A stretch of 64,000 nucleotides of DNA. Source: Diadema antillarum (lineage: Eukaryota). The notes under the pieces are model-generated. The model did not search any database, was not told the origin of the DNA, and saw only the letters and a program-made list of their open reading frames with translations. A program made the position numbers and the translations under genes. The DNA lies in contig NW_027271249.1 in NCBI RefSeq assembly GCF_040938485.1, positions 744,001 through 808,000 of the forward strand, read 5' to 3'. This document shows positions 2,469 to 62,202 of the stretch, piece after piece (positions within the stretch are counted from its first letter, which is position 1; each line of letters starts with the position of its first letter).

Positions 2469-3419
2469 TGTAGCCTTCTCTCCTTCTGCCGCTAGTGTAT
2501 ATGTTATTATACGCTGTGTGCCATCCGGCCCCGGCAACTAGCTGGAGAAGGGTCAGGATGGTCCGAGCTAGGCTGGGGTCCGTTTGGTTGAAATATACAA
2601 CCAGGCGTGGAGAACGGCGTTGAAATGTACCATATTGCTGGGTTACTTACTACCAGTCTATTCCCATTACTTGCTTACTACCAGAATACTACCAGTCACA
2701 ATTCATCCAACGAAGATACCAGTACCAGAGCAGCTCATCCAATCGCAGATACCAATACCAGTGCAGCTCATCCAATCGCAGATACCAATACCAGTTCACT
2801 CGCATATCATTTCATCAGTTCCGTAATTGCACTGCACTACTCACCAATACTTGTGTTATACTGCAGCAGACTTCAAATGAAACGGTCCAGGCAGTAGTAT
2901 CCACTTCAATCAACGCTTTATTGACACTACTTATATCCACACTTTGGCCCGTATCTAGGCCCACCCAGCTGGCTTATCCACACTTTGGCCCGTATCTAGG
3001 CCCACCCAGCTCTATCGGCCTGTATCCAGGCCCACCCAGCTGTTTCGATACATATTCGACCTCTTATTATTCTCCGACCGCTATATTTCCGAAACAGTTA
3101 CGCATTTTACTTACTGACCTTTTCCTAACATACTAACGCTTATTAACCTTCCTCATCATACGGAAATGATTAAATAACGAAGCAATAATTGTATGAAAGA
3201 TTATTACTGAACATAATCGCATCTCCAACAATTATTACCCCTCTAAAATTCCTAACAAAACAATCCATAAACGTCAGTTTCCTTGAAACTGATCGATTCA
3301 TGATCGATTGCTAAAATAATCGATCGATTATATATTCGACCACGAAACTTTCAATATTGGGCTAATTTTCACCCTTTTTCTTACTAATACACTAATCTAC
3401 CAATTCTCCATTGGTTACA
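2469..3419 (-). repeat. 3' LTR of the Gypsy element (951 bp)
   Basis: Runs tgtagcc...ggttaca. Differs from 16236-17184 by about 3 substitutions and one 2-bp indel by eye. Contains internal ~33-bp and ~40-bp tandem duplications and a minus-strand AATAAA at 2917-2922. Confidence 0.97.
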
Positions 3420-16235: not shown

Positions 16236-17181
16236 TGTAGCCTTCTCTCCTTCTGCCGCTAGTGTATATGTTATTATACGCTGTGTGCCATCCGGCCCCG
16301 GCAACTAGCTGGAGAAGGGTCAGGATGGTCCGAGCTAGGCTGGGGTCCGTTTGGTTGAAATATACAACCAGGCGTGGAGAACGGCGTTGAAATGTACCAT
16401 ATTGCTGGGTTACTTACTACCAGTCTATTCCCATTACTTGCTTACTACCAGAATACTACCAGTCACAATTCATCCAACGAAGATACCAGTACCAGAGCAG
16501 CTCATCCAATCGCAGATACCAATACCAGTGCAGCTCATCCAATCGCAGATACCAATACCAGTTCACTCGCATATCATTTCATCAGTTCCGTAATTGCACT
16601 GCACTACTCACCAATACTTGTGTTATACTGCAGCAGACTTCAAATGAAACGGTCCAGGCAGTAGTATCCACTTCAATCAACGCTTTATTAACACTACTTA
16701 TCCACACTTTGGCCCGTATCTAGGCCCACCCAGCTGGCTTATCCACACTTTGGCCCGTATCTAGGCCCACCCAGCTCTATCGGCCTGTATCCAGGCCCAC
16801 CCAGCTGTTTCGATACATATTCGACCTCTTATTATTCTCCGACCGCTATATTTCCGAAACAGTTACGCATTTTACTTACTGACCTTTTCCTAACATACTA
16901 ACGCTTATTAACCTTCCTCATCATACGGAAATGATTAAATAACGAAGCAATAATTGTATGAAAGATTATTACTGAACATAATCGCATCTCCAACAATTAT
17001 TACCTCTCTAAAATTCCTAACAAAACAATCCATAAACGTCAGTTTCCTTGAAACTGATCGATTCATGATCGATTGCTAAAATAATCGATCGATTATATAT
17101 TCGACCACGAAACTTTCAATATTGGGCTAATTTTCACCCTTTTTCTTACTAATACACTAATCTACCAATCCTCCATTGGTT

Positions 17182-17184
<3 letters not shown>
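16236..17184 (-). repeat. 5' LTR of the Gypsy element (949 bp)
   Basis: Direct repeat of 2469-3419 with TG...CA ends, followed by (AT)n. Confidence 0.97.
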
Positions 17185-52200: not shown

Positions 52201-52329
52201 AATTTGGCACTTGCCTTGTATTGGAGTTTCATCTTTATTTTGTCTTCACTTTGTCGTTATTTTGTCTTTACTTTATGTTTACTTTGTCTTTATAATTGTC
52301 AATGAACATGATCGGGGCTCATTGCAGTA

Positions 52330-52570
52330 TCTGGTGGAAGACCCAAGTGCTTGCATCACCGCCTGGCACCATGTCTTCATGCTGTTGATTAGCTTCGTGA
52401 TTCGCTGCTGAGGAATGACGTTCCACTCGTCAAGTAGTATCTAATCAGGGAGTCCTGCCGATGTCGTTGCATTTGTGACCCTCTTCCCCACAGCTCGGCC
52501 AAGTTGATCCCAAAGATGTTCTATGGGGTTGAGGTCGGGACTGCGCACAGGCCAGTCAATTCTAGTGATG

Positions 52571-52610
<40 letters not shown>

Positions 52611-52668
52611 AAAGTTGCACACAAGTCATGCTCTATGTGGTCTTGCGTTGTCATCTTTTTGAAGCATC
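52330..52668 (-). pseudogene. Tc1 transposase C-terminal remnant (DD34E region)
   Basis: The minus strand reads DDNARPHRA*...GITRIDWPVRSPDLNPIEHLWDQLGR, with stops and an internal (CT)n expansion at 52573-52606. Confidence 0.85.
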
Positions 52669-52856
52669 TCAGCTTCAATTTGCCCTATGGCGCGGGCTTT
52701 TTGAGCACACGTGGCATGATGTCAACCATAAAACTTGATGAGCTATCAAAATTGCCTGGCCTGGCACCACTGAAAATTTGAATGTGAAGTTAAGATGTCT
52801 ATTTAAATTTGCCTTCATGTCTGACCAGTGGAGAACTAAAGACATAACACAAATCA

Positions 52857-53092
52857 ACATAAGATACACTCGGTTTGCGGTTCGCCATGCATAGTCCTTA
52901 GAAGAACTGTTGGAATGACAGGAGAAAGATAGAAAGAAAGGTCGGATGAGAGGTGAGAAATTGAGTAAGAGTATTCTTTCTGGAGTGAGTGTAATCCTGA
53001 AAAGGACTGTGAACCAAGGAAAATAGAAGAGTTTAGGAAAGGACTCAACGTTTCGGACAGTTGACTGTCCGTCCTAAGGAGTGAGAGAAAGC
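52857..53092 (-). mobile_element. Penelope-like pLTR/UTR fragment A
   Basis: 236-bp inverted copy of 55913-56148 (about 7 differences by eye); carries the hammerhead motif. Confidence 0.7.
53043..53082 (-). ncRNA. Minimal type I hammerhead ribozyme with core mutation G5U
   Basis: ACTC-CTTAGGA-C-GGACAG-TCAA-CTGTCC-GAAA-CG-TT-GAGT. CUGA is changed to CUUA at 53076. Confidence 0.75.
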
Positions 53093-55912
53093 AGGAGATG
53101 CGGCGGGGTTGAGTAGGCGGGATGCGGACGTGAGTGAAGCTTTTGTATTATTTTCCCACATTTACAATTTTCTCCTATATACAATAACTACTACGCTTAA
53201 CTAGATAACAAGGAGCCGGCCAGCCATTCTGGATATGACATATATGCTACTCCTTTCTCCCTTGTATTATATTCCCTTATATACAATTTTCTCCTTTATA
53301 CAATAACGATTATATTGAATACCATTGCACCGATGGCACGTTCGCCAACGTTAAATCATCATACATGCTAAATATTATATTTGTTAATTATGTCACTATT
53401 ATCTAACAGATAACAAGGAGCTGACTCCTTAACATATCACAAGGTAAGAAATATTTATATTTTCTCTTTATATATCTATATACATGTATATAGGTTACGT
53501 AAATGTCACACAAAATTATATGTTCATATGGAATATATATGTAAATAGTTAAGGTGTTGTTTTGTTTTGCTATTTTCTATGCTTTGTTCTGAAGAAAAAA
53601 TGAATAAAATGAAGAACATTTTATCATTTTGAAAACCTTAAATGTAAAAATTCGGTCATGATAACGTATAAGTGTTTTCTGTCCATTATTCCCAACGCCT
53701 TCTCTCTTTCTTACGAACTTTCCCCTCTTTTTCACCCTTTCACCCCCACCCTTCCCCTTTACACTTTATCCTTTTCTCTCCTTTTTCCTCCCACCATATT
53801 ATAATATAACTGTGGTGATAAACAGATAATGATTGTGTATTAAGACGACTGTGTTTACATCTGCTTCTTTTATAAGCAGGAGGCACTCATTTCTCTATCA
53901 GTAAGACGGGAAATCACTGGCAGACCTATCACCAACTCGGGGGCCATCCCACACCGAGCATATAGCGATCTCCATCCTCTACTGGCACCTGTCAACTGCT
54001 CATCCTACCCGATTTTTTTTTTTATACGTGTATGACGCATCGGATCTCTCCAATAGCCTCCAATCTTAAACAGCCGGGGTCACCAAATAAGCTTGGAGAG
54101 GCTCGATCCGCCTTCACTATCGATGCAATACTATTCTATATGTTTTCTCTGCCATATATATGGTACTATATATAATAGTGATTTCATATCGCCACTTTGC
54201 TATGCAAGAGCATGTTGTTCAATAATTTTACAGCCCTTTGGGCACATTATACAATTATGACACTATTTCATAGACAAGAGTGCGACTGACCTGAAATTTG
54301 TAACTCAAAACTAAATTTTAAACAGGAGCTCTTGATTCTTTCTGGTGACCCCCTTTCTGGACTCAATTATTTTACATTGTTAGGCTTGAAGCCTGCCTTC
54401 TACAACCGCACACTTGTCCCATTAAGAATGCTGTTTCTAACTTTGTTTCCAATATTTATATGATTATAATTATATTATCATCTTTGAATATTACATATAT
54501 GCATGGAGCTCCATGATATAAGCATGAGGTATTAATAGGTTATAGGAACAAGTGCTGTATTGCACTAAAGTTTCTTTTTTCCATATGTATATCTGTTCCA
54601 AGTTTATGAACTCATACAAATATTGATTATTCAGATTTTTTTTATAATTGCCACAAATATTAAGACATTTCGCAGAATTTGAAAACGTTGAACTTAGTCC
54701 AGTATCACGAGCCGCTCCCAGCATTTTATGAAATCCGAGGTCAACCAACAAGCTGAGAGCGGTTCGAAATGTTATAACTGGCAGTTGGTGTATTATATGC
54801 ATTTATTTCATACCCATCAGACATTGTAATGTTTTTCTTGATGGGTTGGTCATTACATATTCTTACAGGCGAGCGAGACCTGTTACAAATTACCAAAATG
54901 GTAATTAGACAGAATTGCGACTGTCCCAAATTTGTTAAATATGTATCAAATTTATACGAGTACTTACTCCATGGTTGACCCACTTCTGGTCTTTATTTTT
55001 TCAGTAGTCACCGGCTTGAGGCCCTTTTTATCATAGTCGCACTTCTGTCTGCAACTTAATGTTAATTATTATAAGAAGGCGAAACCAAAAACATATGTTT
55101 GTGTGGACGTGATATAGAGAGGTATTATGAATAGGCACTATTTTATGTTATGTACATGTATATACATTAGTTTATATAAGAATATAAATCGGTATATACA
55201 TACATATACAGGCGTCTACATTATGGTATATAATATGTATTTAAAAGATTGTTAAGAATTGAATGAATTATAGGAATAATAGGTTATCTTAAAATATATA
55301 TGCATATATACTCATTAAAGACAGGCTATATGTACATATTTTTTGGTAATGTTACCAGAATATAGATAAGAAAGTTAAATACAAGAAGAGTTATGATTAT
55401 TTAGAATAATGTATTATGCAACAGTGGGAATACAGGCGTCCCATAGGTGACAGTTTTGGTGCCTTATAAAATAAACACAGAAATATTTGGAGTTTTGAAT
55501 TTATATCATTACGCATTTGTAAAATGCAAACTATATACACGGTTGTATATACATCATTATGAATTTATATAATATGCGCAATGATATGGTATATCATTAC
55601 GTAAACCCACGTATGAACCCATACTTGGCCGGGGAGCCTCGGCAGTTTTATATATACATGTATATCATTATACAATATCAATTAATGCTTTATAAACCCA
55701 CATGTATACTACTACAAATACTATAGAATAAACCAATTTAAATTGCTAGGAATTCATGAACTCAATACATATCGCTACGTCCGTCATTTCACCTAACAAA
55801 CCACCCATCCTCATTAGCAACTTATGATTTTATATGAAGAATACGCACATTGTGGGGAAAATTATGAATAGATAGGTCCCCATTGAATACAACAATAGAG
55901 TAGAATAGAATA

Positions 55913-56148
55913 GCTTTCTCTCACTCCTGAGGACGGACAGTCAACTGTCCGAAACGTTGAGTCCTTTCCTAAACTCTTCTGTTTTCCTTGGTTCATAGTC
56001 CTTTTCAGGACTACACTCACTCCAGAAAGAATACTCTTACTCAATTTCTCACCACTCATCCGACCTTTCTTTCTATCTTTCTCCTGTCATTCCAACAGTC
56101 CTTCTAAGGACTATGCATGGTGAACCGCAAACCGAGTGTATCTTATGT
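55913..56148 (+). mobile_element. Penelope-like pLTR/UTR fragment B
   Basis: Inverted copy of 52857-53092, preceded by (TAGAA)n. Confidence 0.7.
55923..55962 (+). ncRNA. Minimal type I hammerhead ribozyme with intact core
   Basis: Stem I ACTC/GAGT, core CTGAGGA, 6-bp stem II GGACAG/CTGTCC with a TCAA loop, GAAA, and a palindromic ACGT in place of helix III. Predicted cleavage after 55958. Confidence 0.82.
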
Positions 56149-57474
56149 ACTACACCATGCAAACACCTTCCTTCAAAAATCAACAAAAGAACATGTTCTC
56201 TATTTACTCTTCACGACCATCCTCATTCATAAGGACCGTTCTTGTTCATTTTGCAGCTTTTCAATGCAGACCTTATCAGACACTTTTGAGTACAGCCTTT
56301 TACTTGATAGCATAATCATAATGAGTAGGATATCATTTCAAACAGAATTTAATAATCTTTCTGTTGATATCAAGCATGTATTGTATAGTGCTTACAAACT
56401 GGAGAAATTTACAACTGAAGTCTGATTTCCAAATTTTTTGAGGGGTTTATATTATGTATATCATAATTTGCGTATATCTTTAAATATGTATCTGTGTATG
56501 TATGTGTGAGAGTGTGCCCGCGCGGGTATGGTGTATTCGAGAAAAGTGAATATTGACGATCTACCATATTGATGACAGCAAATTGCACCTTAACCTCCTG
56601 ATGATCGAACGAGCAAAATGTAAAAGAAGAGATGTGATGATCTAACTGTCCGAACCATTCTTCTTTCATATTCCTCCATCATTCATTCGACCATTCTTTT
56701 TACATTCACACACTATCTTTAAGGGCATTATGCATCGACTGATAGAGAAATGACTGAATTTTCCATCAACATGATCAATGACAAAATCTATACCAGAGCT
56801 CGATAGCAATTATCAACGTCTTAACAACGCATAATTATCATGAATACATACAAGAAGTATATACACGCTTTTTGAGTTATGGGAAGTTAATGTGCTTTAT
56901 TGATACACTGAAATTGGATGATAACAGTTCAGCATGATCAACGACATTGGTATTCTGAAAACATTTGTCATTTTTCTTCAAGTTGATCTACTTGATGCGT
57001 TACGTTTCTGTGATGCCTGACAACCTATTGCTCGATTTTTTTTTTCAATGAATATTGCATGCTCTTCTGTAATTACTCTGAAACGTAGATCACTACGATT
57101 TGCGTAGATCCCTTTGATATGGATATCAGTCTATTTTAGTTCTATCAGAGCACACTCAAGAAACATGAACCCCTAAAACAAGCGCAGAGAAACATGATGA
57201 AATTAAACAAGAGGATATGATATTTGTATGTGTAACATAAATGCCAACCTATACCTCAGGTAAGTTAATTGAACTCTTTCATTACTATACCCTGGTCTTC
57301 CAAAATAAGTCTATGCGTTTGACCGTCAGACAAAATGTAATTTCAAGAAAGAGAATTTTTCGGTTACCCAATCTTGAAATTGAGCCCAACATAGGTGCCA
57401 AGACGGCATGACAACATAACGTGTGAACGTGTAATCAATGCACATGTGTTTGGATCCATAACTCTTTAGGTGGC

Positions 57475-60083
57475 CTACTCCGTGGGCAACTTGCACATGA
57501 AGTGGTTGACGAGGGCAGAATCGCAGGGCAAGTCGTTCCATCTCGGGTCGTTGCTCTCGAGCTGCATGTGGACGCAGTCCTCGACGCCGCCCCAGTTGTC
57601 GGGCTGGTTGGCTCTCCATGAGACGAAGTCAAGGGGCGTACCATCAGTCCACACCATGTCGCCCTCGCTGGCGACGTCACTCAGTCCCAGCCACAGCATA
57701 GCATTGCCCTGCAGTAAATACAACACTAGCCATGCTGTACTCTTCAATAATTACCTGATTACGGTTTTATTATGAGTACCAGTGGCGGATGAGGGGGGGG
57801 GGGGGGGTACCGGGCGCCCACTTTTTTTTTTGTCAAAACAAAAGAAATAAAAGGAAAAAATGGATGGGAGCGCGTGCGCCCCTTCCCCCTTTATTTCTTA
57901 AAACCCCCTCCCCCCCCCCCCTTTACGGAATTCCTTGATCAGCCCCTGAGTAGGTGAGGTGGTTATTGACGAGTATGTTTTTTTCCAAAAAAAAAAATCC
58001 CATTTCCTGAGTTGTTTTTTTTACACGCCATTGTTTTGTCCCTGAAAATTATTTTCTTTTATATAATATATTTCATCTTCCTCGTGTCTTTGTGTCTATG
58101 TTGGAATCACAAAAATTGTGTAAATCCTTTCATGAAGGAACATTTTGTTGCAGTGTAATTGTTGTAATTGTCATTTTTATTGAAAATTATTTTATTCATT
58201 TTGTGTCATTGTTGTGTTGCTTTGTCATGGAAGAACATTTTGCAAAGATACGAAGTTTCGGCACTCAGTTGCGTTCACAAAGGAGCCTCTACACTTTTTT
58301 TTATCGCATTTAATATCATAAAAAAGAATAATCCCCTTTAAAAAAAGTTAACGTCCACCACCATCCTTCGCACAAAATTAAAACAATGTTGAATTAACGA
58401 ACGTAAAGTGACAAATTAGGGAGTCTCCTCAAACCGCAAATAAGATGGTATTTTGTTCTTGAACTTGTTTCATTAATTCTTAAATTACTAAATTAAAAGA
58501 ATGAAATACAAATATTCTGTTTATTTAATCATCTTTGTGTCCTTACTCCCTATGTCACTTGAATTCTGAGTTGACAAAAAATTCTAAATTTTCCCACTTC
58601 AATTTTCTTTCAGGTTATAGAGAGATAGAAAGAACGGAAACGTATTTTTGCTATTTCATTCATATCTCATTGATGTCTCATCTCATTCATGTTATTATCA
58701 TTCCCTTGATGGGCATTTCCAAATTAAAGACAACGTGATAATTTTGGCAATTTTTACTTTTGTGCATTGGAGGATAAAAACAATGTGCTCAGTCATGCGT
58801 AAAGTTTCCAGTTATATTGACTTACTAGATTGATAGCCAATATCTTTATTACGGTACAGAATACATTGGTTTTCATGAAAATCTTCTATAAGAAGTCTTT
58901 TGAAAAATATAAAGTGTTTACTTTCTTTTTTACTGAGTATTTGTATCTCAATGAGAATGTATGAGTTACCTTTCTCTCCCCCTCCTCATTTTTTTTTTTT
59001 ATTCTGGAGATGTTCAATACTTTTTTTATCGACAGAAAGGATCATTTTGCGTAAATAATTGCATTTTTCGTAAAGTCATCAACTTTACAAGTCGTTACTC
59101 ACAAGAATTGCAATGTCTCATTCTACATGAATTATTTAATGTAGAAATTCCCAAAATTTAAAAAAGTACATTCTTTTTATTTTTTTTTTTTTGGTAAAAC
59201 TGCTCAGTTTTTTTTCTTTGTACATCAAAAAAAAAAACAACAAACCGAATACGGTTCTCATGGAGAACTGCATACGTTGCAAAAGTCTCTATAGATGGCA
59301 GTGGCATGTAATAGGAGGGAATACCCCTCTCTGCAAATTATTCCTGCTTGTAATGTACGTCCCCGCTATATTCTGTCGACATCTATCTTATCCCTTCTCA
59401 ACGAAACAGACAATTTTACATGTCCTAAGAAGACTTAATAGGAACTGAAAATACTGAAAAAGACAAGTTATACTATAATTCATATGATATAATGTTTTCT
59501 ATGTACAAATATGAATATAAAAATGTCTTAGATGTTTTAGATTTACATAGATAAACAAAATCATGACAAAGATTTCACTTAGTGCTATCAGCTTTTTCGA
59601 CATGCGCCTTTTTATCCCCCCCCCCGACTGAATTTCATTCATTTCATTTATTTCACTTCCAACAATGAGATACATTTACATACACAAAATAACACAATAT
59701 TATTATCAGAACAATGTAGTAAGGAAGAAAAGAACACATGAAATTAACATTACAAAATACGTGAAATATCCAAAACAACCATAGATTCTACAACTGATCA
59801 GAACAAAACAAAAATGAGCAAATATTAGTTCCTCCAGCCTTGCTCTCAAATGATATCTAATTGATTTCACGGACGAGAACACGTTTTTAGAGATCTGTAC
59901 AGCTGTATTTCTTTTACCTCCTGTTGGGTAGCAGCCCTGTAATGTTCGAAGACAAACTCCTGCTCGGCATCCGAGTGAATCGATGCGAGATGACCGATAT
60001 CCACACAGTTCCCTCCGTGAGACACGGTGAAAGTGTTGCACCGTTCCTCGGCCCCTTGCCATGAGAGGCTCTCTGCGACATGC
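57475..60083 (-). CDS. C-type lectin copy 2, exons 2 (60083-59918) and 3 (57708-57475); exon 1 not found in the window
   Basis: Near-identical to copy 1, with QPD/WND retained and canonical CAG/GT boundaries. Block homology to copy 1 runs ~56510-61572 versus ~43480-48530. Confidence 0.88.
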
Positions 60084-62202
60084 CTGTAGAGATACAATTT
60101 GTATTTCATAAGTTTTACCGTTATCAAAATAATGCCAACATGAAAGAACTACACATTCATAAACACTGACGTCATAAATAGTTTCAATTTGTCAGAGTCT
60201 GTCACCAATCATTACCAATAGCTAGAAGTTCAAAGTTACGGAAGTAGATTAATTCGGTAAACTGGCCGGATTTTAATACTTGGACGCCACTCGAGGAACA
60301 GCTGCACAACAACGTTTTTATTCCAAAATTAAGATTTTAGATTTTAACATTCCTTTGGAATTGAAATGTATTGCCCGTATTCAAATCAGATGAGATTGAA
60401 AGAGGTGCATCAGATCTTGTGTATGCGTTCTTTCTTCTTTTTTTTTTTCTTTTTTTTTTTGGGGGGGGGAGGGGGTTATGTGGCTTCAAGGTGCTATCGA
60501 TTTTTTTTTTCAACTTACCAGGAGGAATCAAAATCTACATTGATAAGACATTACATTAGTTCATGTGTGTCAAACATTTCACATAGCGTTGTTTTTCACG
60601 CAAGGGTGACAAAATCGTCATTTTCATCACATGCTTACATGCACTTACACAAATAACGCTCACCAGTTACTCAAATGAGTTTTGTTAATTTTAATATATT
60701 TGTATCTATAGTCCTCATGTAAACTACTATTTTTCCCTTTTAATTCTGAAGAGGGACTTCCAGTTTGTAAGCCTTTGACTACAGTTTTCGGAAAGTGATT
60801 AGGCACTACGAGTATACGCTGATGCTGATCAATTTGGTAACAAAGATTCCAGTTAGTAATTTTCGTCACTTACAATGATAATGTTATTTTTTTTGTCTTT
60901 GCTGCTGTAACCTAATGTAAGGTAAGTAATTAAATCAATTCCGCTGAAATGTGATTAATTTAGTGAAAGAGGTTGATCATGTAATTTAAAAATAACAAAC
61001 AAATAATACAATTCGTGGTTTCTAAGTTTTTCATTTCTGCCATTGTACATGTCATTAATCGCCTATAAATTTATTGTGTGATGGTTCAAATGAAGTCGTA
61101 AACCTACAACAAATTGTATGGAAGTGTCAACAGAAAAATACGATGATCTAGATAATTTTGTTAACAATATCAAGACTATACTTTTCACTTTGTTACATCC
61201 CCAGTTAACAATTTCTTCAGTGTTTCAAACACATAACTCTCCCATGGGAATTTGGCCTGACGTTTGAGTGAATTAATTGCCCTTGTGAAAAAAGTAATGT
61301 TTCCAAAACAACGATGAAACTTTTTTTTTCCCGGAGGGGGGGTCAAATTCAAATGTCCGTCGACAACCGAGAGAAGTGTAGATATGCAATTATTTCTAAC
61401 CGTCCGTGGAAAAAAAAATCATTATATTTCAAACTCCATTGGACCCTCAAATACATGCCCTTGGGAGGCAATCTGTCCTGAACATGGAACATATGCTTTG
61501 CTTTCGAGATCTACAAATTCAAAATGACGTCATTTCCAATTATTGAGAGCAGTCTTCGCATAATCCATAATAGGTTTTCCCTCCTAATTTCATCAGATTT
61601 GCATTCGGATTAACGAGAAGGAGTTCAATGTCAAGCAATTTTCGTCAATGCTTTGCTCTCACGGTTTATTTTAATTCTCTGATCATTCAAATTCGTTTCA
61701 TGTCATTCCTTTTAGATTCTATTTCATTCAATTTAGAGGGAAATTTATTCAATTTAACGACGCAAAGTGGCATTCAATTTAGCGTCAGGTGGATATACGT
61801 TCAATTTCGTCCCAAGTACGAATATCAATTTCATTTACAGGAACACAACTTCGAATTTTAAGCATTCAAAGTCAGTCAACATAAACAAGTTCTGTTGTAA
61901 GTGATTCATACCGCATTTATGCACGTCAAATTCTCATTTTCATTGTTAAAATAATTTGATCATAAAATGTCATCTTCATTTCATCTTTATATCGGTGTAT
62001 TTAATCAGTTGATTTCAGTCATACATGTATTTTACGTTACTCTTTTTGCCCAATCTTTCTTCCAATTTCACTTTATTCATAACATATGGTTGTAACACTT
62101 GCGAAATGGTCATATCTCTCAAATTTTTAAACGTCCAGATGCATTATGTACATTTTGTAAGCCAGCCCTTGGTCGAATTTTTACCTGCCTCGTATCTATA
62201 TA

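What the first reader, a model, noticed from the sequence alone, without database searches (positions are those of the whole stretch)
52857..56148. Inverted pair of Penelope-like repeats with minimal hammerhead ribozymes, one intact and one with G5U
Seen: two 236-bp copies (~97% identical by eye) point away from each other across 2.8 kb of AT-rich DNA. Each has stem I, CUGAnGA, stem II and GAAA, with a palindromic ACGU replacing helix III. Copy A has CUUAGGA. Established: Penelope-like elements encode such minimal hammerheads, which can cleave as dimers, and G5 is a catalytically essential core base. Inference: because they are on opposite strands, one transcript through the locus would carry one ribozyme plus its antisense and fold into a ~236-bp dsRNA stem with a 2.8-kb loop (a possible siRNA or editing source). 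The pair might also bound a composite element inserted between the lectin copies.
Basis: partly seen in the sequence, partly recalled or inferred. Interest (0 to 1): 0.7.

Follow-up and report, generated by a model that had tools for sequence, protein, structure and literature searches.

The report
Split Penelope-type hammerhead repeat pair
The two mirror-image repeats are the two arms of one ordinary insertion of a Penelope-type retroelement fragment, each carrying that element's minimal hammerhead-ribozyme motif, and they are pushed 2.8 kb apart by an unrelated retroposon-like repeat; the kind of feature is already well described.

Summary
Arms 52857-53092 (-) and 55913-56148 (+) are 236 nt and 97% complementary. 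Each carries a minimal type-I hammerhead. Copy B is intact, with the predicted cut after 55958. Copy A has G5U at 53076.

The unit is a dispersed repeat with at least 259 candidate copies in a 1.75-Gb genome, which earlier notes call sea urchin. It shows Penelope-like element (PLE) insertion hallmarks:
- an optional 37-nt 3' tail
- head-to-head 5'-truncated partners, one arm tailed and one not
- 7-13-bp target duplications

A model built only from hammerheads downstream of RT+GIY-YIG ORFs of this genome finds B as the best hit in the window and A as the second.

Public DNA contigs show the empty form of the host repeat. So 52854-56182 is one inserted block, with a 5-bp duplication (ACAAA).

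The spacer is not element interior. It is a 5'-truncated copy of a separate retroposon-like repeat, flanked by AGCTTT. It most likely nested in later (about 55%), or arrived with arm B (about 30%).

No RT/GIY-YIG partner was found for this unit, and no RNA data exist, so the dsRNA/siRNA idea is untested.

The scan has already reported the same kind of head-to-head PLE hammerhead stubs elsewhere in this genome. This is ordinary: a new member of a known kind.

The parts
52849..52853 (.). Left copy of the 5-bp target-site duplication ACAAA in the host repeat
   Evidence: Empty-site joint 52848->56183 with 5 shared letters, seen in 4 DNA runs. Sequence read.
52854..52859 (.). 6 nt (TCAACA) between the duplication and the 3' end of arm A. 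This is junction filler, or the first bases of the tail.
   Evidence: No-tail arms elsewhere end at ...GTATCTTA(T).
52860..53140 (-). Arm A. A 5'-truncated inverted copy of the hammerhead-bearing unit, without the 3' tail. It includes 48 nt of the family's GC-rich 5' extension (53093-53140).
   Evidence: The extension is shared with L004, L005, L013 and L029.
53042..53083 (-). Minimal hammerhead motif of arm A, disabled by G5U (window 53076)
   Evidence: Model R1 gives 14.7 bits, E about 0.15. The allelic copy on C1363 has G5.
53138..53143 (.). Left copy of the direct repeat AGCTTT flanking the spacer. Candidate target duplication of the nested repeat.
   Evidence: Read. Spacer-family alignments begin at 53144.
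53144..55912 (+). Spacer. A 5'-truncated copy of a separate retroposon-like (LINE-like, unclassified) repeat family, ending in ...AGAATAGAATA.
   Evidence: Many dispersed copies of different lengths all end at 55909-55913. A conserved upstream segment is found in about 28 longer copies. There are no ORFs over 103 aa.
55913..56182 (+). Arm B. A copy of the hammerhead-bearing unit from unit position 1, with the 37-nt 3' tail (56146-56182).
55922..55963 (+). Intact minimal type-I hammerhead motif of arm B, with the predicted cut after 55958
   Evidence: Model R1 gives 21.3 bits, E about 0.0025, the best hit in the window. Structure counts.
56183..56187 (.). Right copy of the target-site duplication ACAAA

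Best explanation
A and B are the two arms of a single Penelope-type retrotransposition event.

Inferred mechanism, from the published PLE mechanism: the element's endonuclease cut both strands of a host repeat at ...ACAAA.... Each 3'-OH primed reverse transcription of an RNA that ended in the hammerhead-bearing unit. One cDNA started at the outer start site and has the tail (B). The other started at the inner site and has no tail (A). Both cDNAs were 5'-truncated, and their 5' ends were joined head-to-head.

This gave the usual short palindrome-like PLE stub, with a 5-bp target duplication.

Later a 5'-truncated copy of an unrelated retroposon-like repeat inserted at the junction by target-primed reverse transcription. 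It duplicated AGCTTT and pushed the arms 2.8 kb apart.

The hammerhead motifs are inherited cargo of the family. B keeps an intact core and A has decayed (G5U). Nothing indicates a present function at this locus.

Shown: the repeats, the motif, the family signatures, the single inserted block, and the spacer's family membership. Inferred: the order of events and the mechanism.
For: - Arms and motif.
- Family: at least 259 candidate copies at 86-97% identity. There are two alternative 3' ends 37 nt apart.
- Pairs: in about 12 independent head-to-head pairs, one arm has the tail and the other lacks it, as here. The pairs are flanked by 7-13-bp duplications.
- Empty site: joint 52848->56183 skips 3334 nt with 5 shared letters, in four DNA runs of two organisms.
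- Hammerhead class: 13 motifs from this family and from bona fide RT+GIY-YIG elements (Pfam) fit one structure. 90.5% of cells are paired, against 30-46% when the partners are slid. 7 of 13 pairs have compensatory changes, including C3-G8/U3-A8 and a palindromic 15.2/16.2.
- Independent model: a model built without this family finds B first and A second in the 64-kb window.
- Spacer: its copies share a fixed 3' end with variable 5' truncation. AGCTTT flanks it. At C1150 the same family sits at the same unit position with GCTTTCTC on its left side.
- Literature: PMC4209133 (motif features, opposite-strand pairs), PMC8557442 (inverted 5'-truncated partner, tail at one end only), PMC11167929 (two RT start sites, both strands extended).
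Against: - No RT/GIY-YIG ORF was found next to any sampled copy. The unit has no detectable similarity to 20 sampled PLE loci.
- Arm B is truncated at unit position 1-3, exactly where the spacer family sits in two other loci. The nested-insertion reading therefore needs a preferred target site or a coincidence.
- The same spacer-end/unit junction at C1150/C52 and C113 could instead mean common descent from a chimeric template.
- No spacer copy above 80% identity over its full length exists outside the allele.
- Ribozyme activity is unmeasured. Published minimal PLE hammerheads cleave poorly in vitro.
Confidence: 0.75

Rival explanations
1. One event, chimeric template. Arm B and the spacer were copied together from an RNA in which the retroposon-like repeat already lay just upstream of the hammerhead unit. 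That RNA would be a non-autonomous PLE-mobilised composite, as at C1150. Arm A came from a second, uninterrupted template. The cDNAs were joined at 53140/53144.
For: - The spacer-end/unit junction is contiguous at C1150:147485-148145, at its allele on C52, and at C113.
- At C1150 the whole composite lies inside a GC-rich-extended unit.
- PLEs are reported to carry foreign sequence in trans (PMC8557442).
- The block as a whole has one target duplication.
Against: - The AGCTTT repeat flanking the spacer would be chance, about 1 in 500 (my estimate).
- Arm B's unit belongs to the young subfamily (95-97% to other copies). The composites elsewhere are only 77-83% identical, so a young composite master is needed and none is in the assembly.
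- Only 3 composite loci were seen.
Confidence: 0.25
2. Functional hairpin locus. The inverted arms are kept because a read-through transcript folds into a roughly 236-bp dsRNA stem that feeds siRNA/piRNA production or RNA editing.
For: Geometry only. The arms are 97% complementary and 2.8 kb apart, so any transcript across both would pair.
Against: - No RNA run holds the stretch.
- The other haplotype or duplicate (C1363) has deleted window 55281-56052, including the hammerhead half of arm B.
- The arms diverge at the same rate as the flanking DNA.
- Dozens of equivalent pairs exist as insertion by-products.
- The locus sits inside another high-copy repeat.
Confidence: 0.07
3. Two independent insertions of the same family that happen to lie in opposite orientation on either side of an older repeat copy.
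For: - The family is abundant.
- The arms differ in 5' extent and in tail.
Against: - The host repeat is contiguous across exactly 52853|56188 in its empty form, with a single 5-bp duplication outside both arms.
- The one-tail/one-no-tail, 3'-ends-outward layout is the same as in about 12 single-event pairs that have target duplications.
- The arms are each other's closest non-allelic relatives.
Confidence: 0.04

Closest known systems
Minimal hammerheads (min-HHR) of metazoan Penelope-like elements (Cervera & De la Pena 2014, PMC4209133)
   Same: - CUGANGA and GAAA boxes
- an unpaired nucleotide between A9 and G10.1
- the G10.1-C11.1 pair
- a long helix II (6 bp) and a short helix I (4 bp)
- no helix III, but a palindromic 15.2/16.2 (ACGU) that allows dimer pairing
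- mostly single or opposite-strand copies from truncated elements
   Different: The unit is not linked here to an RT/GIY-YIG ORF. Cleavage has not been tested.
Canonical PLE insertion architecture (Craig et al. 2021, PMC8557442; Frangieh et al. 2024, PMC11167929)
   Same: - heavy 5' truncation
- an inverted 5'-truncated copy joined at the 5' end
- a 30-40-bp tail at only one end of the insertion
- target duplications
   Different: - No direct pseudo-LTR or partial tandem was seen in the sampled copies.
- The arms here are separated by 2.8 kb of a foreign repeat instead of abutting.
Animal non-LTR retrozymes (Cervera & De la Pena 2020, PMC7229834; Li et al. 2026 preprint, 10.64898/2026.07.22.740005)
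   Same: Short non-coding hammerhead-bearing units, proposed to be non-autonomous derivatives of PLE pseudo-LTRs.
   Different: - Retrozymes are head-to-tail tandem arrays of type-I hammerhead monomers that give circular RNAs.
- This family is dispersed as single or head-to-head copies. No direct tandem was found.

Membership tests
Metazoan PLE minimal hammerhead (min-HHR) | Conserved core boxes C3-A9 (CUGANGA) and G12-A14 plus A15.1 (GAAA), and H17 at the cleavage site | tested here: met
   Copy B has CUGAGGA ... GAAA ... U17. Copy A fails at G5.
Metazoan PLE minimal hammerhead (min-HHR) | [quoted passage not shown] | tested here: met
   C at 55934, then G55935 pairs with C55950. The same layout occurs in the hammerheads of RT+GIY-YIG elements of this genome.
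Metazoan PLE minimal hammerhead (min-HHR) | Helix III absent or 1 bp, with palindromic 15.2/16.2 for dimer formation; long helix II; short helix I | tested here: met
   ACGU at 55954-57, helix II of 6 bp, helix I of 4 bp. Pair counts: 90.5% of cells paired and 7 of 13 pairs compensatory.
Metazoan PLE minimal hammerhead (min-HHR) | Detected by a structure model of hammerheads from bona fide PLEs | tested here: met
   Model R1, built without this family, scores B at 21.3 bits (E about 0.0025) and A at 14.7 bits. All other window hits have E>=2.
Metazoan PLE minimal hammerhead (min-HHR) | Self-cleavage as a dimer | not testable with these tools
   Needs in vitro transcription. Published min-HHRs cleave weakly (PMC4209133).
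Rfam hammerhead families (types I/II/III, HH9, HH10) | Score at or above the family gathering threshold | tested here: not met
   No hammerhead hit at the gathering threshold or at E<=10. These models require helix III.
Penelope-like element (PLE) insertion | [quoted passage not shown] | tested here: met
   A 37-nt tail is present in part of the copies. About 12 pairs have one tailed and one untailed arm.
Penelope-like element (PLE) insertion | Inverted 5'-truncated copy joined at the 5' end, with a target duplication around the whole | tested here: met
   At this locus, the empty-site joint with ACAAA.
Penelope-like element (PLE) insertion | ORF with RT and GIY-YIG endonuclease belonging to the same element | tested here: not met
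   - No ORF lies upstream of the unit in sampled copies.
- blastn and nhmmer find no match between the unit and 20 GIY-YIG loci.
- Only a small sample of at least 585 GIY-YIG candidates was examined, so an autonomous partner may exist.
Penelope-like element (PLE) insertion | Direct pseudo-LTRs (partial tandem) | tested here: not met
   No direct unit-unit arrangement in about 40 sampled loci.
Animal non-LTR retrozyme | Head-to-tail tandem array of hammerhead monomers | tested here: not met
   The only tandem array (C526) repeats a 55-nt internal piece that lacks the hammerhead.

The most novel reading that the evidence does not exclude
The retroposon-like spacer family may target one specific site of the PLE unit, just before GCTTTCTC and 10 nt upstream of hammerhead helix I. 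Its exact 3' end abuts that base in at least three independent loci (window, C1150/C52, C113), with flanking duplications of different length (AGCTTT here, GCTTTCTC on the left side seen at C1150). That would be a retroposon that parasitises PLE ends. Alternatively, the PLE machinery repeatedly mobilises this foreign sequence as cargo.
Probability: 0.3. Interest if true: 0.35.

Novelty: new member of a known kind. Interest (0 to 1): 0.17.

Why it matters
It matters little beyond annotation.

- It shows that a long-range inverted repeat with ribozyme motifs in a lectin gene cluster is the by-product of a known retrotransposition mode plus a nested insertion, not a designed hairpin locus.
- The family gives a clean natural data set for the PLE mechanism: about 12 pairs with one tailed and one untailed arm, each with target duplications. 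This fits the two RT start sites and double-strand priming found in vitro.
- The recurrent junction with a second repeat family is a small open question.

Tried and rejected
- **Rfam.** Scans at the gathering threshold and at E<=10 gave no hammerhead hit. The weak mir-568/mir-297/histone stem-loop hits in the AT-rich spacer and arm are chance.
- **9-mer as target duplication.** AAATCAACA occurs at both outer junctions. I rejected it in favour of ACAAA once the empty-site contigs were seen. Six of its letters belong to the tail consensus.
- **Spacer as a spliceosomal intron.** PLEs can retain introns, and in Drosophila virilis the intron ends at helix I. No register of the 8-nt repeat gives GT-AG, GC-AG or AT-AC (read).
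- **Spacer as PLE interior.** It has no ORF over 103 aa. Other unit copies have a different, GC-rich upstream region.
- **Retrozyme tandem array.** Not found.
- **Link to RT/GIY-YIG elements.** I checked coordinates, blastn and nhmmer. Nothing was found.
- **Pfam on the CCHC-like piece upstream of the spacer family.** Nothing was found, so 'LINE-like' rests on its 3'-end/5'-truncation pattern only.
- **Further genome sequence.** The C113, C52 and C1150 junctions were therefore judged from coordinates alone.
- **RNA evidence.** No RNA run holds the stretch.
- **Cofolding two B monomers.** It only gives the trivial helix-II duplex and says nothing about catalysis.

Full report
**Observation.** The repeat finder reports one long inverted repeat in 52-57 kb. 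Its arms are 52857-53092 and 55913-56148: 236 nt, 97% complementary, 2820 nt apart.

Copy B, read on the plus strand, is:
- ACUC (55923-26)
- CUGAGGA (55927-33)
- an extra C (55934)
- GGACAG / UCAA / CUGUCC (55935-50)
- GAAA (55951-54)
- CG, U16.1, then U17 (55958)
- GAGU (55959-62)

Copy A on the minus strand is the same, except that G5 is U (window 53076).

Rfam finds no hammerhead at the gathering score or at E<=10. That is expected for a motif without helix III.

**The unit is a dispersed repeat.** The genome (G000) is 1.75 Gb in 2963 contigs. Earlier notes of this scan call it a sea urchin. A whole-genome search finds at least 259 candidates; the 40 scored are 86-97% identical.

Aligning 30 copies with their flanks shows three things:
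- The family extends 5' of the 236 bp into a GC-rich region. Arm A keeps 48 nt of it, up to 53140.
- There are two alternative 3' ends. One is ...GTGTATCTTA. The other lies 37 nt further on, at ...CAAAAATCA (56182 in arm B).
- Many copies start within a few bases of helix I.

Only 12 of 28 distinct sampled copies keep an intact motif. The others carry single hits in the core or the helices. The allelic copy A on contig C1363 still has G5. The G5U change is therefore ordinary decay.

**Hammerhead class.** Published features of metazoan PLE minimal hammerheads (PMC4209133) are:
- the two core boxes
- the G10.1-C11.1 pair
- palindromic 15.2/16.2
- a long helix II and a short helix I

All are present here.

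This genome holds hundreds of GIY-YIG matches, often in inverted pairs. Two were checked, and each has RVT_1 plus GIY-YIG in one ORF. About 0.65 kb downstream of the stop codon, each carries a 41-42-nt motif of the same layout.

An ungapped alignment of 13 such motifs, five from this family and eight from the other families, fits one structure:
- 90.5% of cells are paired, against 30-46% when the partners are slid.
- 7 of 13 pairs show compensatory changes.
- These include C3-G8 versus U3-A8, and CG/GC/AU at 15.2/16.2.

One caveat applies. The motifs were picked with a pattern that required the boxes and a helix II of at least 5 bp. Helix II pairing is therefore partly by construction. Helix I, the 3-8 pair and the palindrome were not required.

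A covariance model was built only from the eight motifs outside this family. It finds copy B as the best hit of the 64-kb window (21.3 bits, rough E 0.0025, full length). Copy A is second (14.7 bits). Everything else has E>=2.

**PLE insertion signatures.** The literature describes three features:
- An inverted 5'-truncated copy adjoins the 5' end.
- A 30-40-bp tail is often present at only one end (PMC8557442).
- That tail comes from two adjacent RT start sites, with both target strands cut and extended (PMC11167929).

In this family, about 12 independent head-to-head pairs have one arm ending with the tail and one without. They are C359, C458, C578, C1031, C284, C644, C1265, C126, C391, C526, C954 and the window. 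In every one the 3' ends point outward.

The sampled pairs are flanked by direct repeats of 7-13 bp. Examples are AGATAACACC, ATATATATGT and TATATACA....

The window pair has the same layout: A has no tail, B has the tail, and the 3' ends point outward.

**One inserted block.** The flanks (52300-52887 and 55975-56415) belong to a very high-copy repeat. Contigs of four public DNA runs from two organisms contain the empty form. It joins 52848 to 56183, skipping 3334 nt, with 5 letters (ACAAA) fitting either side. Loose ends read straight from 52852/52853 into ...GAACATGTTC....

So 52854-56182 is a single insert with a 5-bp target duplication (52849-52853 and 56183-56187). The 9-mer I first took for the duplication overlaps the tail consensus, and this result supersedes it.

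Contig C1363 is collinear with window 24.8-57.2 kb at 93-97% identity. It is an alternative haplotype or a recent duplicate. It carries arm A, the spacer and the 3' part of arm B. It lacks window 55281-56052, and it has 5.7 kb extra at the position of 53519.

**The spacer.** It has no ORF above 103 aa. It is a member of another repeat family:
- One copy covers it end to end at 80% (C113).
- About 30 copies cover it in blocks at about 71%.
- Many short dispersed copies cover only its last 150-750 nt.
- All of them end at 55909-55913.

This is the pattern of a retroposon with a fixed 3' end (...AGAATAGAATA) and 5' truncation. A 470-nt segment seen in L036 lies directly upstream of about 28 of the longer copies at 90-94% identity. 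By eye it contains a CCHC-like motif of the kind found at LINE ORF2 ends. Pfam finds nothing there, so the class is not established.

The same junction, spacer 3' end followed by GCTTTCTC and the hammerhead unit, is also contiguous elsewhere:
- At C1150:147485-148145 and its allele on C52, at 79%, it runs to the untailed end of the unit.
- At C113 it runs for at least the first 45 nt of the unit.

At C1150, the left end of the spacer family is preceded by the family's GC-rich region and GCTTTCTC. That looks like an 8-bp target duplication in an uninterrupted unit. In the window, the spacer is flanked by AGCTTT (53138-53143 and 55912-55917), and family homology starts at 53144.

No register of the repeat gives intron boundaries.

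**How the spacer got there.** I favour a later nested insertion by target-primed reverse transcription (about 55%). It would use the same first nick as at C1150 and a different second nick.

The alternative is that arm B and the spacer were copied together from a chimeric RNA (about 30%). That reading has two costs:
- It needs the AGCTTT repeat to be chance.
- It needs a young composite master that is not in the assembly.

It has one advantage: it explains without coincidence why arm B begins exactly at unit position 1.

**What was not found.**
- No RT/GIY-YIG ORF lies next to any sampled copy. blastn and nhmmer find no similarity between the unit and 20 PLE loci.
- No direct tandem of units exists in the sample.
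- The family is therefore best called a non-autonomous, PLE-type hammerhead-bearing retroelement whose autonomous partner is unidentified.
- No RNA run holds the stretch, so the hairpin-RNA idea is untested. The deletion of half of arm B on C1363 and the many equivalent pairs argue against selection for it.

**Verdict.** The 2.8-kb loop is a separate repeat. The whole is a known kind of structure, and this scan has already met it repeatedly in the same genome.

Noticed in passing
L016 (G000:C526:1116906-1118541): Next to a head-to-head pair, a 55-nt array of about 27 copies built from unit positions 156-202 lies inside the arm that ends with the tail. A piece of the PLE unit has expanded into a small satellite.
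   Followed up: partly
window 52300-52887 and 55975-56440: The DNA that hosts the insertion is itself a very high-copy repeat, with summed contig depth in the thousands in four runs. Repeat boundaries lie near 52442/52449, 52704/52707 and 56439. It is unclassified.
   Followed up: no
window 24787-57207 versus G000:C1363:350100-383314: A 33-kb collinear copy at 93-97% identity sits at a contig end, probably the other haplotype. Relative to the window it has a 5.7-kb insertion at 53519 and a 772-bp deletion of 55281-56052.
   Followed up: partly
window 43434-48531 and 56457-61572; ORF 57475-57747 (-): A tandem duplication of about 13 kb period at 87% identity carries C-type-lectin-like coding sequence (WTDG...WND...C motifs by eye).
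   Followed up: no
L057-L074 (e.g. L058:2515-2556, L066:779-820, L073:3206-3246): At least three other PLE families of this genome carry minimal hammerheads about 0.65 kb downstream of the RT+GIY-YIG ORF. Two of them have the U3-A8 core variant. One shows an A-U to G-C compensatory change in helix II between subfamilies.
   Followed up: partly
unit positions 8-19 (window 55920-55931 in arm B): The 5' ends of truncated copies cluster within about 10 nt of the 5' edge of hammerhead helix I, and position 11 is the most common start. This may mean an RNA 5' end or an RT stop at that point. Copies do not start at the predicted ribozyme cut (unit position 47).
   Followed up: partly
window 2469-3419 and 16236-17184: Direct repeat of 951 bp at 99.5% identity, 13.8 kb apart. 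This is compatible with the LTRs of a young LTR retrotransposon.
   Followed up: no
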